The notes below the pieces were generated by a model. The model ran no database searches. It was not told the origin of the DNA and saw nothing but the letters and a program-made list of their open reading frames with translations. From positions 62,001-126,000 of the forward strand of contig CDMY01000312.1 in assembly GCA_001179505.1 (NCBI GenBank): DNA of 64,000 nt, read 5' to 3'. The stretch comes from Vitrella brassicaformis CCMP3155 (taxonomy: Eukaryota > Protista > Chromerida). The translations under genes were made by a program, and so were the position numbers. Positions 55,911-63,831 of the stretch are shown here, one piece after another; position 1 is the stretch's first letter, and every line of letters begins with the position of its first letter.

Positions 55911-56458
55911 TGATGCCGCTCTGTACTCCTCGATCACTCACTCATACATAAACATGCGTATACAGGTGACTGCTTCACTCACTAAGGCCTTAGTGAGTGN
56001 NNNNNNNNNNNNNNNNNNNNNNNNNNNNNNNNNNNNNNNNNNNNNNNNNNNNNNNNNNNNNNNNNNNNNNNNNNNNNNNNNNNNNNNNNNNNNNNNNNNN
56101 NNNNNNNNNNNNNNNNNNNNNNNNNNNNNNNNNNNNNNNNNNNNNNNNNNNNNNNNNNNNNNNNNNNNNNNNNNNNNNNNNNNNNNNNNNNNNNNNNNNN
56201 NNNNNNNNNNNNNNNNNNNNNNNNNNNNNNNNNNNNNNNNNNNNNNNNNNNNNNNNNNNNNNNNNNNNNNNNNNNNNNNNNNNNNNNNNNNNNNNNNNNC
56301 TGTGAAGCAGTCACCTGTATACGCATGTTTATGTATGAGTGAGTGATCGAGGAGTACAGAGCGGCATCACACTCACTAAGGCCTTAGTGAGTGAAGCAGT
56401 CACCTGTATACGCATGTTTATGTATGAGTGAGTGATCGAGGAGTACAGAGCGGCATCA
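55822..56458. repeat. 89-bp units carrying the palindrome centre: two direct copies left of the gap, mirror-image copies right of it
   Basis: TGATGCCGCT...TAAGGCCTTAGTGAGTG at 55822-55910 and 55911-55999; reverse-complement unit at 56370-56458 and a partial one at 56300-56369. Confidence 0.85.
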
Positions 56459-57027: not shown

Positions 57028-60000
57028 TCACGACTCAATCAAATGCACTGGCTGCAGCTGCCTCAGCACATCTTGCAAGTCAGAGGGCAGTGGGCAGCTG
57101 ACATCCACAGGCTGGCCCTGCACACGCGGACGGAGAGACAACACAATAGATACAGACAGAGAGAAGCACAGATTGCGATTGCGCCTGCCTGCCTACTTGT
57201 AGGTCGCAGAAGCGTAGGTTGTGACAGTGGAGGAACAACCGAGGGACCCATGTCTTGTCATCTGATCGATTCAATTGCACCACATAGTCATGTGTGATGT
57301 GGTCGCGCGCCTCACCTTCGATTTGTCTTGCGGTGGCGTATCTGTTCTCGCCAACTAAGGGATAACCTAACACACATACACCGACATCATCACAACACCA
57401 TCAGTTGATAGCTCACACATGCATCCCTGCCGCCCAGACATCACACATCCATCGATGTGGCGAACCTGTGTTGCTGAGATGGACGCGTATTTGGTGCGTG
57501 CGGCCAGTGATGAGCCGCACACGCACCAGGCTCATCATGGATGCACTGCCCTCTGAGCAAGCACCAGCTGAATCGCTCTCCGCTTCCGTAGGTGTGCGCT
57601 GCAGGTGGCCGAGGCACTCGTAATACGTCACTGCAACACGGCCATCCTCTGCAATACACACACAAACGCATCACGTTGCTTGCTGCCGCCTGTGTGGTGT
57701 GTTTACCTTCGACTGACGTGGTTGAATAGAGCTCGCCACTCTCTGTCTGCACCCGTGCAATGCAGCCAGATGCAAGCGCCGTTGCTGCCTGCTTCGGATG
57801 CGTCTTAGCTTGTGTAACCTTACTTACCTTCAGCTTATCTGCAGCCCAGTGCTGCCCCGCCGGCACTCGACCATGCACCAGACACAGATACTCCTTTGAC
57901 ACCTGCACAAACCAAACACGCAATCAGATACTCACCCACACATAAAACTCCCCTCTCGGCTCGTCTCGCTGGTACCATCTGTGCGTCGAAGAGCATACGC
58001 AGGAAGTGCCATGCGGCAGGGATCTTGGCCACGATGAGAGCGCCTGACGTGTCGGCATCCAGGCGATGGGCAATGCCGTAATCGACATCGCCATTGCAAA
58101 GGATCGGTGAGCCATTCTTCGCCCAACACCACGCACGAGCTGCACACACAAGAAACACAAGAAGGTTCGGTTTGCGTGCATCTCTATCGCAATGTGTCCA
58201 ATCAAGCAGACGGACCCAGCAGCAGGTGCAGTTTCTCTTGTTCGTCGCTCGCGACCATCCTCTTGGCCTTGTCGATAGCCACAGCTGGCTCCTCCGTCCA
58301 TAGGTCAGGTCTCCGCGAGTCCTCCCTTGGCTCGTCTGCCCTGCTGCCCTTCTCCCCTGCGGCCGGTGGCGGCAGCGATGGCAGCACCGTCCATTTCGGA
58401 GGCTTGTAGAGCACCCACCAGAGAGGCGACTCGTACAGCACTCGAGGGACGTCTTTCCCGGGCCCGTCACTCTGCAGGCAAGGACATGGACACATCAACG
58501 CTAAACCCCCCCATCTCGTGGCCATGCCTTATTACCTGATGCGCCCTCATTTCGACAACAGGGGGGCATCTCGCCAGATGATGCGCCATCATGTGGTCAG
58601 CCAGCAGAATCGACGAGGTTGGCGCATAGCGTTTCGTCTCGCCACCCATGAGCCTGACCACCTCATCCCGGCTGATGTTGCCCTCTCGCAGTGCCCGATC
58701 TGTCAGCGCCTCCCACATCTCCGTCGGCAGGCCACCTGCCGTCTTGCCGTACGCCCATGCAACTTTCGATGCCGTCTTGCGGTCAGTGTGAACCAGCACC
58801 TTCTTGTCCGCGACGATTGACCGAATCCGATCGAACACAGGGGCATCGAGGCACCCAGCCGTCACCAAACTCCACACCACGTCGGCAAGGTTCCGCAAAG
58901 TGAAGCATGCGGGGTCGCCCAGTGGGTCAGACGAGTCCATCGCGAGCACGTCAATATCCCTCTCGCCAAGCCTGTGGTCAATCTCGCTGGCGATTTTGTC
59001 ATAAAACTGCGGATCGGTGTGGCCTGTGGATGCGGCGGCCCACAGGAGGGTGGTGAGGGCCAGGGGTGTGAAGGACGGCAGGTGGGAGAGCGACCACTCT
59101 GTCAGCTGTGTGAAGAAGGAGGGATGGCGCAGACCAAGAGTGCCGTATGCCCATGCTGCATTGGTGAAACACATACAATCGTGTGGTATATTCACATGCG
59201 CATGTGCGTGGTGTGGCTCACCGATGGTTGCCAGGTCTCGTGGTGCAAATGTGTCCCAGTCTCTCTCCTCCATGACGTGAGTCGTGATCATCCCCAGCAG
59301 CTCCTCATCACACACACCCGACCGGCCGAATCCCCAACACGTCAAAGCCAATTGCTGGACCACACACACACACACACACACACACGTCCATCCGCACCTT
59401 TGGCCATACAAGAGGCCTTATCATTCATATCACTGACCACGGGAGTGCACTTGGCGAGGTTTTTGGGCTTCCTCCAGAAGAACTGCGACACGAAGAAGAA
59501 CGCCTCCTTGTTGACACACCCGGCCCTCGCATACGCCCACGCAAGGGTCGCTGCGTCGAATGGGGTCGTCTGCACGAGGTAGTCGGGGCCCTTCTCGTGC
59601 AGCAGGCGGGCCACTGCATCGAACAGGGGTGTGGGGGGCGACGGGAGAGGCGCATATGCCGACAGCGATCGGACCATGTCGGTCATGGACATGGTGGGCA
59701 GCCGAGCATGGAGGATGCTGGGACAAGCCGACAGATAGACAGACAGACAGGTAGGTGAGCATGGACTCATGATGTGTGTATGTGTGTGAGCGTACTCTGC
59801 GATTTCATTGAACAACGGTCGTTCCACAGCCTGTGGGCCGTACTTGGACCAGCCCGTGAGAAGGGTCACCACAGACTGACAGTGACAGCACAGAGAGCAT
59901 GCAAACGACGTACATACATGGATGGATCCGTGCTGTCGTCACCTTTGTGTTGTAAGCCGCCACTCTGCATTTGGTCTCCTTTGTGGGGTTGTCGGCCAGC

Positions 60001-62281
60001 AGAAACGCAGAGAGCGTCTTGCAGTAGCCAGGGGGATAATACCTGCACTCATCCACACAATCAAAGAGACAGAGAGAACAGGAGCGATCTCCTTGAACGG
60101 TCCCTCTTTCCCTTCTCCTTCTCTCTGGTCTCACCCAGCCCTTGCGAATGCCATGACCATCGACACAGTGTCCCGCCTGTTCGGCTCGCTCGTGTCCCCC
60201 ACCCTCTCCCTCTCCCTCTCTCTCATGCGCCCAAGATGGTACGCCAGCCGCCTCTCGGCCTCGTCGGCCGCCCTCTCATACAGCACAGACACACTGTCCT
60301 GATGGCCGCCTCTCGCGTAGCCGTATCCCAGCACAGAGAAGCCCCACACAAGGTTCTGCAGTGGCTGGTGGTGGAAGGTGGAGAGCATCTTGGTGCCGTC
60401 CCGGGCAACGCGCTGGCACAGGTGGCCGACGGGGCCGTGCTTGAGGGACGCTAATTGGCCGGGCGAGAGGTGGCTTGCGAGGACGGCGAGGCCCCATATG
60501 GTGTTAGACATGTTCTGGGGGATGGCGCCTTCCAATGGGTAGACGTCAGAGCTCGCGAAGGACGCCAGCCTGCACACAGACACACACAGGGGTGCAGACA
60601 TACATACACGCAATGCAAGGAGGTTGGCTGGTGCGCTCAGACATACCAGTTGACGAGATGGGCTGGCTCGGCCCATTCTGGCGGGTCTGCCGGGTTGACG
60701 TCCTCGATGAGCCTGCCGTACGCCCACATGGTGTTGGAAAAACACTGGGGGGTGAGGGAGGCGATTCGCGTGAGCAATGATGACTGGATCGCCAGCAGCA
60801 GGGACGGATGGCCCAGATACTGTGAATGGCCAAACGACCTGAGCCAACAAAATAGGATGGACAGATGGTTCCCGGCGATTCAGTTTCACCTCACCAAAGA
60901 AAGCTCGTGAGGCTTCTTGTCGAGAATCCGTCAATCAACGGCATGGCGGCCTCGGCCATGCGGTGGTAAAGCCTCTCCCCTACCTCTCCCGTCCTTCGAC
61001 ACACACTGAGTCGCGCCAGGCCCCATGCAGTGTCGGTCAGCTGCATGTGGTTGAAGACGATCGACGGCAGCAGGGCGTCGAGGGACCGGCAGAGCGATGC
61101 GATCGACGTCGGGGCAGACACGGCCTGACACGGACAGAGATGGGAAGGAGAGCATGTCATGGCTGCAATCGACGTGTTGCTCTCTGTCATCCTCACCCGA
61201 TATTTGTAGTCCGGGTCGTCGTCATCTTGCTTCGGTGACAGGCAGTATCGGAACTTCCCCAGCCCCCACACCATCGTCGACACGTCCAATGGCTTCACGC
61301 CACCACGCCCATGTCTTTCCCTCTCCACATCTCGCAGCGTCGCCGACACCTTCTCCGTTGCCCACCCACACGCGTCGACCAGTGCGGCCTTTCCCTCGTC
61401 TGCCTTGGTGTCCTTGTGCCACTCGGCCACCTTCGCCAGCGCCCACACGAGGTTGGCCGCATCACGAGTGTCCCACCGAGAGTCTTGTGGACGGCTCTCG
61501 TCCATCTTTCTGAGCAGTGCAGTCGCTTCCAGGAGGATTGCCGTGATGGGCCGCCTCCACCCATCGAGGGAAGAGGATGCCTGAAGGACGGCCGTTGCCG
61601 ACCGGTCGAAAGGGGGATGACGGTCGTTGTGGGGCATCAGCGGCGAGCCATAGAGCCGCACAATCCCGTATACACAGCGGATGACCGCCCCTCTGCTGAC
61701 CGAAAAAGCGCTGCCGACCCGTTCACACGAATTCTCCAGGGACCGATGAATCGCCAGAAGCAGTTCAGCCATGCTCTCTTTATCACGATCATCAACACGC
61801 TGAGCTGACGCCGACAGCTGCATTAGCCGATGCAGAGCGGATGCAGCAAAGGGCAGGCTGAGAGGGATGGTCGAGGCTGGCGAGAGGTTGCCCGACAGGT
61901 GGTCAAAGACCTGGTCGATGGAGGAGGCTGCCGAGAGGTCAGCTTTTGGCCGCAGAGCCCGCCCATCGATTCTGCGTTTGCTGCCGCCGTTGGCAAAGGC
62001 TGGGCGGCGGTCAGAGAGGACCGTGACAGGGCGCCCCTTTGGCGCGTCGAGGACATCTGTTGCATTCATTGACACACACACCAGAGACCACTCATCCACG
62101 CTGCAGATCTTTTCATTCATGTGTCAGTGTGGGTGCTGTTTATGTCAGTCCATCCATGCGCACCTGTGATCTTTGGCTGTGTGTGGAGATCTGCATGAGC
62201 AGAACTTGATGACGATGCGAAGGCGCGATGTCGCGAAGCAGAAAGACGGAAAGAACGTACAGCTGGACGCAATGGATGCAT
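57028..62281 (-). CDS. Mitochondrial-leader + HPR/OPR-like helical repeat array + C-terminal RluA-family pseudouridine synthase (single spliced gene)
   Basis: Leader MHPLRPAVRSFRLSASRHRAFASSSS. At least 11 repeats like LTPQCFSNTMWAYGRL and FAPRDLATIAWAYGTLG (period 37-38 aa). A phase-0 64-nt intron at 58472-58535 joins these to VLYESPLWWVLYKP, IAHRLDADTSGALIVAK, KEYLCLVHG, LITGRTHQIRVHL, YPLVGENRY, RLFLHC. Confidence 0.85.
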
Positions 62282-62446
62282 CCTTCCCCTCGAGCGGGTC
62301 TGCTTTCCCTCAGATGCGCCGATGGCGAAAGACCGTGAGCTCAGCGAGCTCAAAAAAACGGTGCAAACATTTCAAGTCGACGACTGACGTAATGCACATG
62401 CATTCAGGCAAGGAACATGAATGCATGTGAAACCGCTTCCGCTGTG

Positions 62447-63831
62447 ATGACGAAGCGTGCCCGCACAGAGGGCGCGTCGGCTGCTTCGGCGGCCTCACTC
62501 TCCCCCTCCCTCTTCCTCAAGGTGCTTGATGAGGCGGGCAGTGCGGTGGCGGACTACATCTGTGCAGCGGACCTGTATGCCCTCCGCCTGACCTCCCGCG
62601 TGGCCACACAGCAGCTCACCGACAACTACCTCGTCCAGCGCATCAACCGGTGCATCACCGACCAGCAGATAGGCGGCGTGCTGACCTTCGACGCCAGCTA
62701 CCAGCCGGGCGATGGCGAGGCCACGCCGCGGATGGCCTACTTGCTGCAGCTGCTGTGCGTGTTGGAGGATGGCGGGCAGTGGGCCGGGTGGGTGGGCCCG
62801 ATGCGCATCGCCCGACACGGCCGGGTCGTCGAGTCGCTGCCCATCACTGTGAGGCCGGCGGACGTGCGGCGTGTGGGGTCCAAGGCGGTGTTTGACGGCC
62901 GGGCGGACAGCCTCAAGCAGTACAGCCTCTTCGGCCACCTGCTGGGGCAAGATGAGGCGATGGCCCTCAGACAGATCGACGGCGTCGAGCAGCTGGGCGA
63001 CACGGTGGTGACCGTCTACACGCAGCAGACCCTCTCCGCCACCCATGAATTCGCCGGTTCGTTCGACTGAACGGACCCCATCGTGAGAGGTGAGAGCGAG
63101 ACGAGAGGGACGATGCACATGGCATAGCAGGGCGATGCTCCTGTGTGGTCAATGATGTGTGTGCGTTTGTGCTGCCATCAGTGAACAACGAGATGGATTA
63201 CATGAGTTTCCGACACCTGGTCGTCAAGCGGTAAGGCGACGCCAGAAGCCACCCCCACACACATATGGATGATCCGTCTGTGTGCCTCTCTGCCTAGTTT
63301 TCCGTCTCACGAGCGAAGCATGTGTCATCGCATGATCAACGGCGCGTCAGCACAGGCTCGGTGGCAGCGAGCTGTCGATCTGCTGACCCAAGTAGGTTAA
63401 TGGCGTGGCTCGACAGATGGCTATCTCCGTCAACGCACCTCCTTGTGTTGCAGGCCGCCATCCCCTGGGGTCGCCAGACCAGGACTGTAGACAACGGCCG
63501 GCGGAGCGGCTCCATCTACCTGTGCGGAGGGGGCCAACACGACACCTTCGCCGCTCTCATGTACATCGACAACTTCTACTACGTGGCGACGATCGACCTC
63601 TACACAACTGAGACGCCGCAGCCAGACCAGGAGGGCCCCTTCCGCTTCCCCCAGACCCTCCAGCTGGCCCGCCAGCTGCTGGGCAAAGACGACGAGGAGA
63701 CCCTCTTCGGGGACCTGACGATAGAATTCCTGCGCTTCGGCCAGTTCCATTCACTTCTTCATTTGGAAGCCAAATTGGTGGAAGAAGCCGTGATTAGATA
63801 CAACGCGCGACGAAATTCATCTAAGCATTGA
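62447..63831 (+). pseudogene. Repeated-family (F-box-like) copy B with an in-frame TGA at 63068-63070; inverted paralog of 33037-34456
   Basis: Same exon structure as copy A. Codon CCG (Pro) of copy A is TGA here, 6 codons before the first splice donor; downstream exons remain open. Confidence 0.65.

What the first reader, a model, noticed from the sequence alone, without database searches (positions are those of the whole stretch)
57028..62281. Helical-repeat (HPR/OPR-like) RNA reader fused to an intact RluA-type pseudouridine synthase, with a mitochondrial-type leader: candidate site-programmed organellar pseudouridylase
Seen: an Arg/Ser/Ala-rich, acid-poor N-terminus (MHPLRPAVRSFRLSASRHRAFASS); at least 11 repeats with the F/L-x-P-x-x-L-x-x-x-x-W-A/G core and measured periods of 37 and 38 aa; a canonical phase-0 GT-AG intron (58472-58535) that removes the stop of the repeat ORF and joins it to a pseudouridine synthase with catalytic HRLDxxTSG and GRTHQIR motifs. 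Established: OPR/HPR repeats bind organellar RNA sequence-specifically, RluA-family enzymes make pseudouridine, and myzozoan mitochondrial rRNAs are highly fragmented. Inference: a repeat-guided writer analogous to plant PPR-DYW editing factors but installing pseudouridine, possibly on fragmented mt-rRNA or mRNA. I do not know of a characterised example, but cannot exclude uncharacterised homologs in related genomes.
Basis: partly seen in the sequence, partly recalled or inferred. Interest (0 to 1): 0.85.

Follow-up and report, generated by a model that had tools for sequence, protein, structure and literature searches.

The report
Helical-repeat array fused to pseudouridine synthase
One intron-rich gene of this alga (Vitrella brassicaformis according to earlier notes of this scan) joins a long chain of mitochondrial-type RNA-gripping repeats to an apparently working enzyme that turns uridine into pseudouridine; I found no paper on this design, though dinoflagellates have many unstudied copies, and the claimed mitochondrial address tag is doubtful.

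Summary
The core observation holds. On the minus strand, 62281..57028, sixteen exons joined by fifteen GT-AG introns of 56-107 nt give a 1365-aa protein. It has about 13-16 HPR/FASTK-type helical repeats followed by a complete RluA-family pseudouridine synthase with catalytic HRLD(D1153) and GRTHQIR motifs.

The junction intron (58535..58472, phase 0) is as described.

The fusion is supported by collinear homology to single-ORF proteins with the same two parts. These come from Polarella, Alexandrium, Durusdinium and from poly(A)-tailed mRNA contigs.

The synthase is closest to bacterial RluC/RluD, but the repeat array stands where their S4 RNA-binding domain would be.

Two corrections:
- The "mitochondrial-type leader" (exon 1) has GC3 of 0.33 against 0.72 for the rest of the gene. 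It may be 5' UTR or the antisense of a neighbouring gene's first exon, so targeting is inferred from family precedent only.
- The architecture is not unique. HPR-PUS and abundant PPR-PUS fusions exist, uncharacterised, in dinoflagellates, and this scan has already noted sister loci in the same genome.

I found no transcript evidence for this locus and no paper describing the fusion. Whether the repeats programme the modified site is untested.

The parts
57028..62281 (-). Whole gene model: 16 exons, 15 GT-AG introns (56-107 nt), 4098-nt CDS, 1365 aa
   Evidence: Model assembled. CDS GC3 is 0.71 against intron GC 0.52. tblastn hits of fused homologues fall on the exons in protein order and in changing frames.
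62164..62281 (-).
   Evidence: GC3 0.33 against 0.72 (p 5e-7). Codon LLR -0.20 per codon, in the off-frame range. A plus-strand exon model 62209-62334 overlaps it.
62057..62120 (-). Alternative 5' end: in-frame ATGs at 62120 (MNEKICS...) and 62069 (MNATDV...), continuous with exon 2 if intron 1 does not exist
   Evidence: This is the start of the 409-aa ORF 60891..62120. Codon LLR +0.14 per codon over 21 codons.
58701..61517 (-). HPR/FASTK-type helical-repeat array, residues about 220-985, 13-16 units, spread over exons 2-9
   Evidence: Unit HMM and shuffle control. Pfam FAST_1 26.9 bits on exon 9 against a cut-off of 27.4. phmmer gave 748 repeat proteins, best 4e-34. AF2 of exon 9: pLDDT 79.7, alpha hairpins. 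Fold matches to mitoribosomal, RESC and FASTKD4 repeat proteins. Profile hits RESC6 at 8e-50 and T. gondii mitoribosomal RAP proteins at 3e-14.
58536..59155 (-). Exon 9: the last five repeat hairpins plus a linker of about 55 aa with no S4 or RAP match
58472..58535 (-). Intron 9, the junction intron: 64 nt, phase 0, GTAATA...CCTGCAG; contains an ATG at 58525 in frame with exon 10
   Evidence: The ORF 58202..58525 is listed.
57043..58453 (-). RluA-family pseudouridine synthase domain, residues 1047-1361, exons 10-16
   Evidence: Pfam PseudoU_synth_2 on exon 14 at 30.8 bits (cut-off 26.8) and on exon 11 at 23.5 bits. The profile of fused-clade PUS domains matches positions 2-247 of 250 at 176.8 bits. 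That profile is nearest to RluC (4e-39) and RluD (3e-33) among solved structures.
58042..58068 (-). Motif II HRLDADTSG; the catalytic Asp1153 codon is at 58059..58057
   Evidence: Sequence; alignment.
57485..57505 (-). Motif III GRTHQIR
   Evidence: Sequence; alignment.
57707..57746 (-). 40-nt micro-exon 13 (TESGELYSTTSVE), needed to keep the frame between exons 12 and 14
   Evidence: The frame breaks without it and is restored with it. It fills the homologous segment without a gap.

Best explanation
This is a single nuclear gene. Its product is an organellar, most likely mitochondrial, RNA pseudouridine synthase. In it, an alpha-solenoid of about 16 HPR/FASTK-type repeats takes the place of the S4 RNA-binding domain of bacterial RluC/RluD-type rRNA synthases.

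Shown:
- the exon structure;
- the repeats;
- a complete catalytic domain with every family motif;
- the same two-part design in single-ORF mRNAs of other alveolates.

Inferred:
- The solenoid binds a stretch of single-stranded organellar RNA, as related repeat proteins do on fragmented mitochondrial rRNA.
- It thereby holds the C-terminal synthase next to one or a few uridines, which Asp1153 isomerises.
- The likeliest substrate is a piece of the fragmented mitochondrial large-subunit rRNA.
For: Gene model:
- 15 canonical introns of uniform size; CDS GC3 0.71 against intron GC 0.52.
- tblastn hits of P0158, P0153, P0161 and P0162 fall on exons 8-16 in protein order.

Fusion:
- BLASTP gives single HSPs across the junction to P0158 (6e-50, window residues 690-1358), P0010 and P0153.
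- Pfam finds FAST_1 plus PseudoU_synth_2 in P0010, P0084, P0027, P0056, P0153, P0158, P0163 and P0167. The named sources are Polarella glacialis and Alexandrium monilatum.
- L004 and L005 are poly(A)-tailed contigs carrying one 919-aa fused ORF.

Enzyme:
- All motifs align.
- The clade profile is nearest to RluC and RluD.

Repeats:
-. The nearest structures are all mitochondrial RNA-binding repeat proteins: T. gondii, Polytomella and Chlamydomonas mitoribosomes, RESC6 and FASTKD4.

Precedent:
- Human FASTKD2 assists 16S rRNA modification by RPUSD4 (PMC12687428).
- HPR proteins sit on T. gondii mitoribosomes (PMC11652630).
- Chromerid mitochondrial rRNA is fragmented (PMC6723311).
Against: - I found no transcript of this locus. 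The only public contig found (Logan ERR558149) is unspliced and colinear with the genome.
- No near-identical protein turned up in the protein collections or in JGI metagenome contigs.
- The presumed presequence fails codon tests, so the compartment is not shown.
- The ML tree does not group this PUS domain with the dinoflagellate HPR-fused clades, so a shared origin of the fusion is unproven.
- Exon 9 alone has no PDB sequence hit, and FAST_1 falls just below the Pfam cut-off.
- No binding code for HPR repeats is known, and RNA binding, catalysis and target are all untested.
Confidence: 0.55

Rival explanations
1. The fusion is real, but the repeats do not programme a site. The protein would be a mitoribosome assembly factor or structural constituent, with the solenoid clamping rRNA fragment ends. 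The synthase domain would either make one conserved rRNA pseudouridine by recognising structure, or act mainly as an RNA chaperone independent of catalysis.
For: - The nearest solved repeat proteins are integral or peripheral mitoribosomal proteins and RESC scaffold subunits.
- The PDB search also hits trypanosomal pseudouridine synthases found in mitoribosome assembly intermediates, such as mt-LAF3 in 6yxx.
- Chlamydomonas Raa2, a synthase homologue, acts in a splicing complex with OPR proteins (PMC7912774).
Against: - Every catalytic motif is kept, which argues for selection on catalysis.
- Dinoflagellates hold many paralogues with different arrays, both HPR and PPR. That pattern suits many targets better than one conserved site.
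Confidence: 0.25
2. These are two adjacent genes wrongly joined. A repeat protein would end at the stop at 58467, and a stand-alone RluA-type synthase would start at ATG 58525.
For: - ATG 58525 lies in frame with exon 10 inside the proposed intron.
- No transcript or annotated protein of the fused form was found for this locus.
Against: - The two reading frames would overlap by 59 nt, leaving no room for a promoter.
- The intron has the form and size of the other fourteen.
- Homologues carry both parts in one ORF on mature mRNA, and alignments run across the junction.
Confidence: 0.1
3. The protein works in the plastid, or in both organelles, rather than the mitochondrion. This could come about through a first exon not recognised here or through an ambiguous presequence.
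For: - The 5' end is unresolved.
- An earlier first-stage note reads a sister locus in this genome as plastid-targeted (s1-205554, unchecked).
- One Symbiodinium PPR-PUS protein is named 'chloroplastic' by automatic annotation.
Against: - No hydrophobic signal-peptide core exists in the exon-1 N-terminus: the maximum 9-residue Kyte-Doolittle mean is 0.47. For the ATG 62120 start I get about 1.2 by hand.
- Chromerid plastid import needs a bipartite signal (PMC6723311).
- A plus-strand gene begins within 140 nt upstream, leaving little room for another exon.
Confidence: 0.12

Closest known systems
Uncharacterised HPR(FAST_1/RESC6-type)-PseudoU_synth_2 proteins of dinoflagellates: Polarella glacialis CAE8626030.1 and CAE8660970.1, Alexandrium monilatum, Durusdinium trenchii, and culture or environmental transcriptome contigs
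   Same: They have the same order of parts, with a repeat array N-terminal and an RluA-family synthase C-terminal, and no S4 or RAP domain. They share clade hallmarks in the synthase: KPP.W, W.PR.FLH and CPLP.DL.
   Different: Identity is only 23-26% over the full length and 29-32% in the synthase. The tree does not place the window's domain with them. Some carry an extra C-terminal SAP domain. None has been studied.
Bacterial RluC and RluD (23S rRNA pseudouridine synthases, RluA family)
   Same: These are the best-scoring solved relatives of the synthase clade (4e-39 and 3e-33). The catalytic core and motifs are the same.
   Different: RluC and RluD use a small N-terminal S4 domain. Here about 1000 residues of helical repeats stand in that position and no S4 match is found.
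Human FASTKD2-RPUSD4 partnership in mitochondrial RNA granules
   Same: A FASTK/HPR-type repeat protein and an RluA-family synthase act together on mitochondrial large-subunit rRNA (PMC12687428; PMC5377769). The fusion looks like a covalent version of that pairing.
   Different: In humans they are two separate polypeptides, and FASTKD2 also carries FAST_2 and RAP domains. RPUSD4 is a weaker match than RluC/RluD (3e-11).
Plant PPR-DYW RNA editing factors
   Same: The logic is the same: an organellar helical-repeat array fused to a base-modifying catalytic domain at the C-terminus. This comparison rests on my own knowledge of the family.
   Different: The repeats (PPR) and the enzyme (cytidine deaminase) are different. 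The PPR code is established, whereas none exists for HPR. This is an analogy, not membership.
PPR-PseudoU_synth_2 proteins of dinoflagellates (Polarella, Symbiodinium, Effrenium)
   Same: The same synthase family sits at the C-terminus of a different organellar repeat array. There are many paralogues per genome. The window's synthase reaches its highest pairwise identity, 37%, with one of them.
   Different: The repeats are PPR, not HPR. These proteins are also uncharacterised.

Membership tests
RluA family of pseudouridine synthases (Pfam PF00849) | Profile match above the curated cut-off | tested here: met
   The exon 14 piece scores 30.8 bits against a cut-off of 26.8; the exon 11 piece scores 23.5 bits. 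The spliced domain scores 176.8 bits against the clade profile, positions 2-247 of 250.
RluA family of pseudouridine synthases (Pfam PF00849) | Motif II HRLD with the catalytic Asp, followed by TSG | tested here: met
   HRLDADTSG, Asp1153, at 58068..58042.
RluA family of pseudouridine synthases (Pfam PF00849) | Motif III GRxHQIR and the K-x-Y tyrosine | tested here: met
   GRTHQIRVH and SKEYLCLVHG align with the invariant columns.
RluA family of pseudouridine synthases (Pfam PF00849) | Pseudouridine synthase activity | not testable with these tools
   Needs an enzyme assay.
RluC/RluD subfamily | N-terminal S4 RNA-binding domain | tested here: not met
   No S4 match at E up to 10 on any exon piece. 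The repeat array occupies that position.
HPR / FASTK-like helical repeat proteins | Tandem units of about 37-38 aa, each an alpha hairpin, with a ...L..xxW[AG]x[AG]... core | tested here: met
   13 units found by HMM against 0 in shuffles. Spacing 37-40 aa. AF2 hairpins at pLDDT 79.7.
HPR / FASTK-like helical repeat proteins | Pfam FAST_1 match above the cut-off | tested here: inconclusive
   26.9 bits against 27.4 on exon 9 alone. The whole spliced protein could not be submitted. phmmer links it to FAST_1/RAP proteins at 4e-34.
FASTK family proper / RAP proteins | C-terminal FAST_2 and RAP (PD-(D/E)XK-like) domains | tested here: not met
   No FAST_2 or RAP match on any piece. The synthase stands at the C-terminus instead.
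OPR (octotricopeptide) proteins | 38-aa unit with a recurrent PPPEW motif (criterion from PMC6212722) | tested here: not met
   Only one PPEW, at residues 480-483. The other units have P-x-[FLM]-[FWY] instead.
Mitochondrial matrix proteins with a cleavable presequence | A coding N-terminal basic, acid-poor presequence | tested here: inconclusive
   The composition fits: 5 Arg, 8 Ser, 6 Ala and no Asp or Glu in the first 30 residues. Codon usage argues that the exon is not coding. No targeting predictor was available.

The most novel reading that the evidence does not exclude
HPR-PUS and PPR-PUS proteins could form a protein-guided, site-specific pseudouridylation system of myzozoan organelles. 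It would be the pseudouridine counterpart of PPR-DYW editing.

Each repeat array would read an RNA sequence and place its synthase on a defined uridine in fragmented rRNA or in mRNA. The many dinoflagellate paralogues would then mark many programmed sites.

Because the product leaves a mappable mark next to the binding site, the family could be used to work out the still unknown RNA-recognition code of HPR/FASTK repeats.
Probability: 0.3. Interest if true: 0.85.

Novelty: new variant of a known kind. Interest (0 to 1): 0.6.

Why it matters
Stand-alone pseudouridine synthases are thought to find their sites by RNA structure, and guided pseudouridylation is known only with snoRNAs. A synthase permanently joined to a long organellar sequence-reading array would be a third way of choosing sites.

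It would also be a natural covalent version of the human FASTKD2-RPUSD4 pairing.

How FASTK/HPR repeats recognise RNA is unresolved. Pairs of array and modified site, as with PPR editing factors, could make that question directly testable.

The gene also bears on how ribosomes are built from fragmented mitochondrial rRNA in relatives of malaria parasites.

Tried and rejected
Searches that found nothing:
- Single-exon PDB searches with exon 11, exon 14 and exon 9: no hits.
- A search for the locus's own protein or close kin. The representative library gave nothing above 37% identity. The word-indexed search with the 314-aa ORF gave nothing. The JGI metagenome scan gave nothing.
- Exact look-up of the neighbouring 217-aa ORF: not on record.
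- Literature searches for HPR, OPR, PPR or FASTK combined with pseudouridine synthase fusions: no paper describes the architecture. One search was badly formed and useless.

Results that did not help:
- AF2 of exon 2 without an alignment: pLDDT 44, uninformative.
- Exact look-up of the 409-aa ORF found only an unspliced, genome-colinear Logan contig, so it gives no splice evidence.
- The ML tree of PUS domains leaves the window sequence unresolved, so I make no claim about one or several origins of the fusion.
- A DinoSL search in the homologue contigs found no convincing spliced leader.
- The N-termini of the homologues are mostly truncated, so there is no family-level targeting evidence.

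Not possible or rejected:
- The spliced 1365-aa protein could not be handed to Pfam, structure or database tools, because it has no reference.
- I rejected OPR membership, FASTK-proper membership and an S4 domain (see the membership tests).
Full report
**Gene model**

The feature lies on the minus strand. ORF listing and reading of the sequence show a string of open frames. They can be joined only by splicing. I assembled a model of 16 exons and 15 introns:
- Exons: 62281-62164, 62056-60895, 60838-60647, 60569-60135, 60042-59943, 59875-59796, 59717-59438, 59354-59222, 59155-58536, 58471-58216, 58139-57976, 57902-57828, 57746-57707, 57648-57466, 57366-57197, 57117-57028.
- All introns are GT-AG and 56-107 nt long.
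- The CDS is 4098 nt, giving 1365 aa.

A first attempt without the 40-nt micro-exon 13 broke the frame.

The CDS has GC3 of 0.71, while the introns have 0.52 GC. Eleven of the fifteen introns shift the frame, and six carry an in-frame stop within the intron itself.

Independent support comes from tblastn. Homologues P0158, P0153, P0161 and P0162 hit exons 8-16 in protein order and in changing frames.

**The repeats**

- Sixteen W-[AG]-x-[AG] cores can be lined up. Adjacent canonical units are 37-40 aa apart, others 43-81 aa.
- An HMM built from 8 units recovers 13 units, 8 of them at 31-49 bits. Thirty shuffles gave none at 5 bits or more.
- Pfam FAST_1 scores 26.9 bits on exon 9, just under its 27.4 cut-off.
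- An exhaustive phmmer search with exon 9 found 748 proteins, the best at 4e-34. The sampled top hits are FAST_1 proteins, with or without a RAP domain.
- AlphaFold2 on exon 9 with a 30-row alignment gave pLDDT 79.7 and a run of alpha hairpins.
- Foldseek's best matches are weak in E-value (from 2e-3), but they are all mitochondrial helical-repeat RNA binders: RESC subunits and mitoribosomal proteins of Polytomella, Chlamydomonas and Toxoplasma.
- VIA-align gave Z 14.5 for a T. gondii mitoribosomal RAP protein and Z 11.5 for human FASTKD4. The tool warns that helical repeats have a high background.
- The alignment profile hits RESC6 at 8e-50, Chlamydomonas mL115 at 5e-24 and T. gondii mitoribosomal RAP proteins at 3e-14. 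Exon 9 alone hits nothing in the PDB.
- Only one OPR-type PPEW motif is present, and there is no RAP, FAST_2 or S4 match.

I therefore file the array as HPR/FASTK-like. It is not OPR and not FASTK proper.

**The synthase**

- Pfam PseudoU_synth_2 is met on exon 14 at 30.8 bits.
- A profile built from eleven long alveolate PUS domains matches the spliced window domain over positions 2-247 of 250 at 176.8 bits. No part of the domain is missing, so seven exons are validated together.
- HRLDADTSG (Asp1153), SKEY, GRTHQIRVH, W.PRLFLH and CPLPSDL all align with invariant or near-invariant columns.
- Among solved structures, the clade profile is nearest to RluC (4e-39), RluD (3e-33) and RluA (1e-29). 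The trypanosomal assembly-factor synthases and RPUSD4 lie far behind.

**Is the fusion real?**

For the fusion:
- The junction intron has the same form and size as the other fourteen.
- There is no intergenic space between the repeat part and the synthase part.
- BLASTP gives single alignments running from the repeats through the junction into the synthase: P0158 at 6e-50, P0010 at 6e-47.
- Pfam confirms FAST_1 plus PseudoU_synth_2 in eight such proteins. Named sources are Polarella glacialis and Alexandrium monilatum; a Durusdinium trenchii protein has precomputed RESC6/RESC8 plus PseudoU_synth_2.
- Two Logan contigs end in poly(A) directly after a 919-aa fused ORF.

Against the fusion:
- ATG 58525, inside the intron, is in frame with exon 10.
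- I found no transcript of this locus. The one public contig is genomic in structure, and protein and metagenome searches found no near-identical sequence.

I put the fusion at about 0.85.

**The leader**

Its coding status is doubtful:
- Third-position GC is 0.33 against 0.72 elsewhere, and no other 39-codon window of the gene comes near that value.
- Its codon-usage score sits in the off-frame range.
- On the opposite strand, a plausible first exon of the neighbouring gene (62209-62334, then a 73-nt GT-AG intron, joined in frame to the 217-aa ORF) overlaps it. That exon scores slightly better.

Alternative starts at 62120 or 62069 remain open. Mitochondrial targeting is therefore inferred from what the repeat family does elsewhere, not from this sequence.

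**Context and novelty**

Earlier notes of this scan name the genome Vitrella brassicaformis. I did not verify this independently. The short GT-AG introns and roughly 60% GC seemed to me in keeping with that organism, from memory only.

The same notes record sister HPR-RluA loci in the genome (s1-226923, s1-205554). So the scan has seen this kind of gene before, on other DNA of the same genome.

My own searches add that dinoflagellates also carry many PPR-PUS fusions. At least ten distinct Polarella entries turned up, plus Symbiodinium and Effrenium entries.

The ML tree does not resolve whether the window's domain shares the fusion event with any of them.

Eight literature searches and look-ups inside the most relevant papers found no description of a helical-repeat-synthase fusion.

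The closest functional precedent is non-covalent: human FASTKD2 assisting RPUSD4 on 16S rRNA (PMC12687428; PMC5377769).

**Verdict**

This is a real and probably expressed fusion gene. It is a new variant of a known kind: a modular organellar repeat protein with a catalytic tail, or equally an RluC/RluD-type synthase with a swapped RNA-binding module.

The guided-writer mechanism is attractive and testable, but it is unproven.

Noticed in passing
window 62209-63070 (+): The neighbouring plus-strand ORF (217 aa, no Pfam match, GC3 0.85) can be extended upstream by an exon at 62209-62334 and a 73-nt GT-AG intron, joined in frame.
   Followed up: partly
window 59355-59437 (-), intron 7: A (GT)n microsatellite sits inside intron 7. 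The public Logan contig ERR558149_12424 breaks exactly there (its end is at 59364).
   Followed up: no
window 55997-56305: A run of N (an assembly gap) lies about 700 nt beyond the 3' end of the gene, inside the stretch that another first-stage note calls a giant palindromic element (s1-233328).
   Followed up: no
P0170, P0176-P0199 (Polarella, Symbiodinium, Effrenium): There is a large uncharacterised family of PPR-PseudoU_synth_2 fusion proteins in dinoflagellates. Some members carry further domains: PpiC rotamase (P0180) and PP2C phosphatase (P0191).
   Followed up: partly
P0171 (Cyclospora cayetanensis, 1547 aa): An apicomplexan protein combines an rRNA adenine dimethylase domain (PF00398) with a PseudoU_synth_2 domain, so two rRNA-modifying activities sit in one chain.
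   Followed up: no
P0160 (Logan, 869 aa); P0164 and P0168; P0153, P0010 and P0159: Other odd architectures occur among long alveolate synthases. P0160 has two tandem PUS domains, one with degenerate motifs (HPMD and GHKHQSR). P0164 and P0168 combine UBA with PUS. P0153, P0010 and P0159 carry C-terminal SAP domains.
   Followed up: no
window residues 477-485 of the model (exon 3, about 60700): A single OPR-like 'PPEW' motif lies in an insertion after one repeat unit. It may be a trace of the kinship between HPR and OPR repeats.
   Followed up: no
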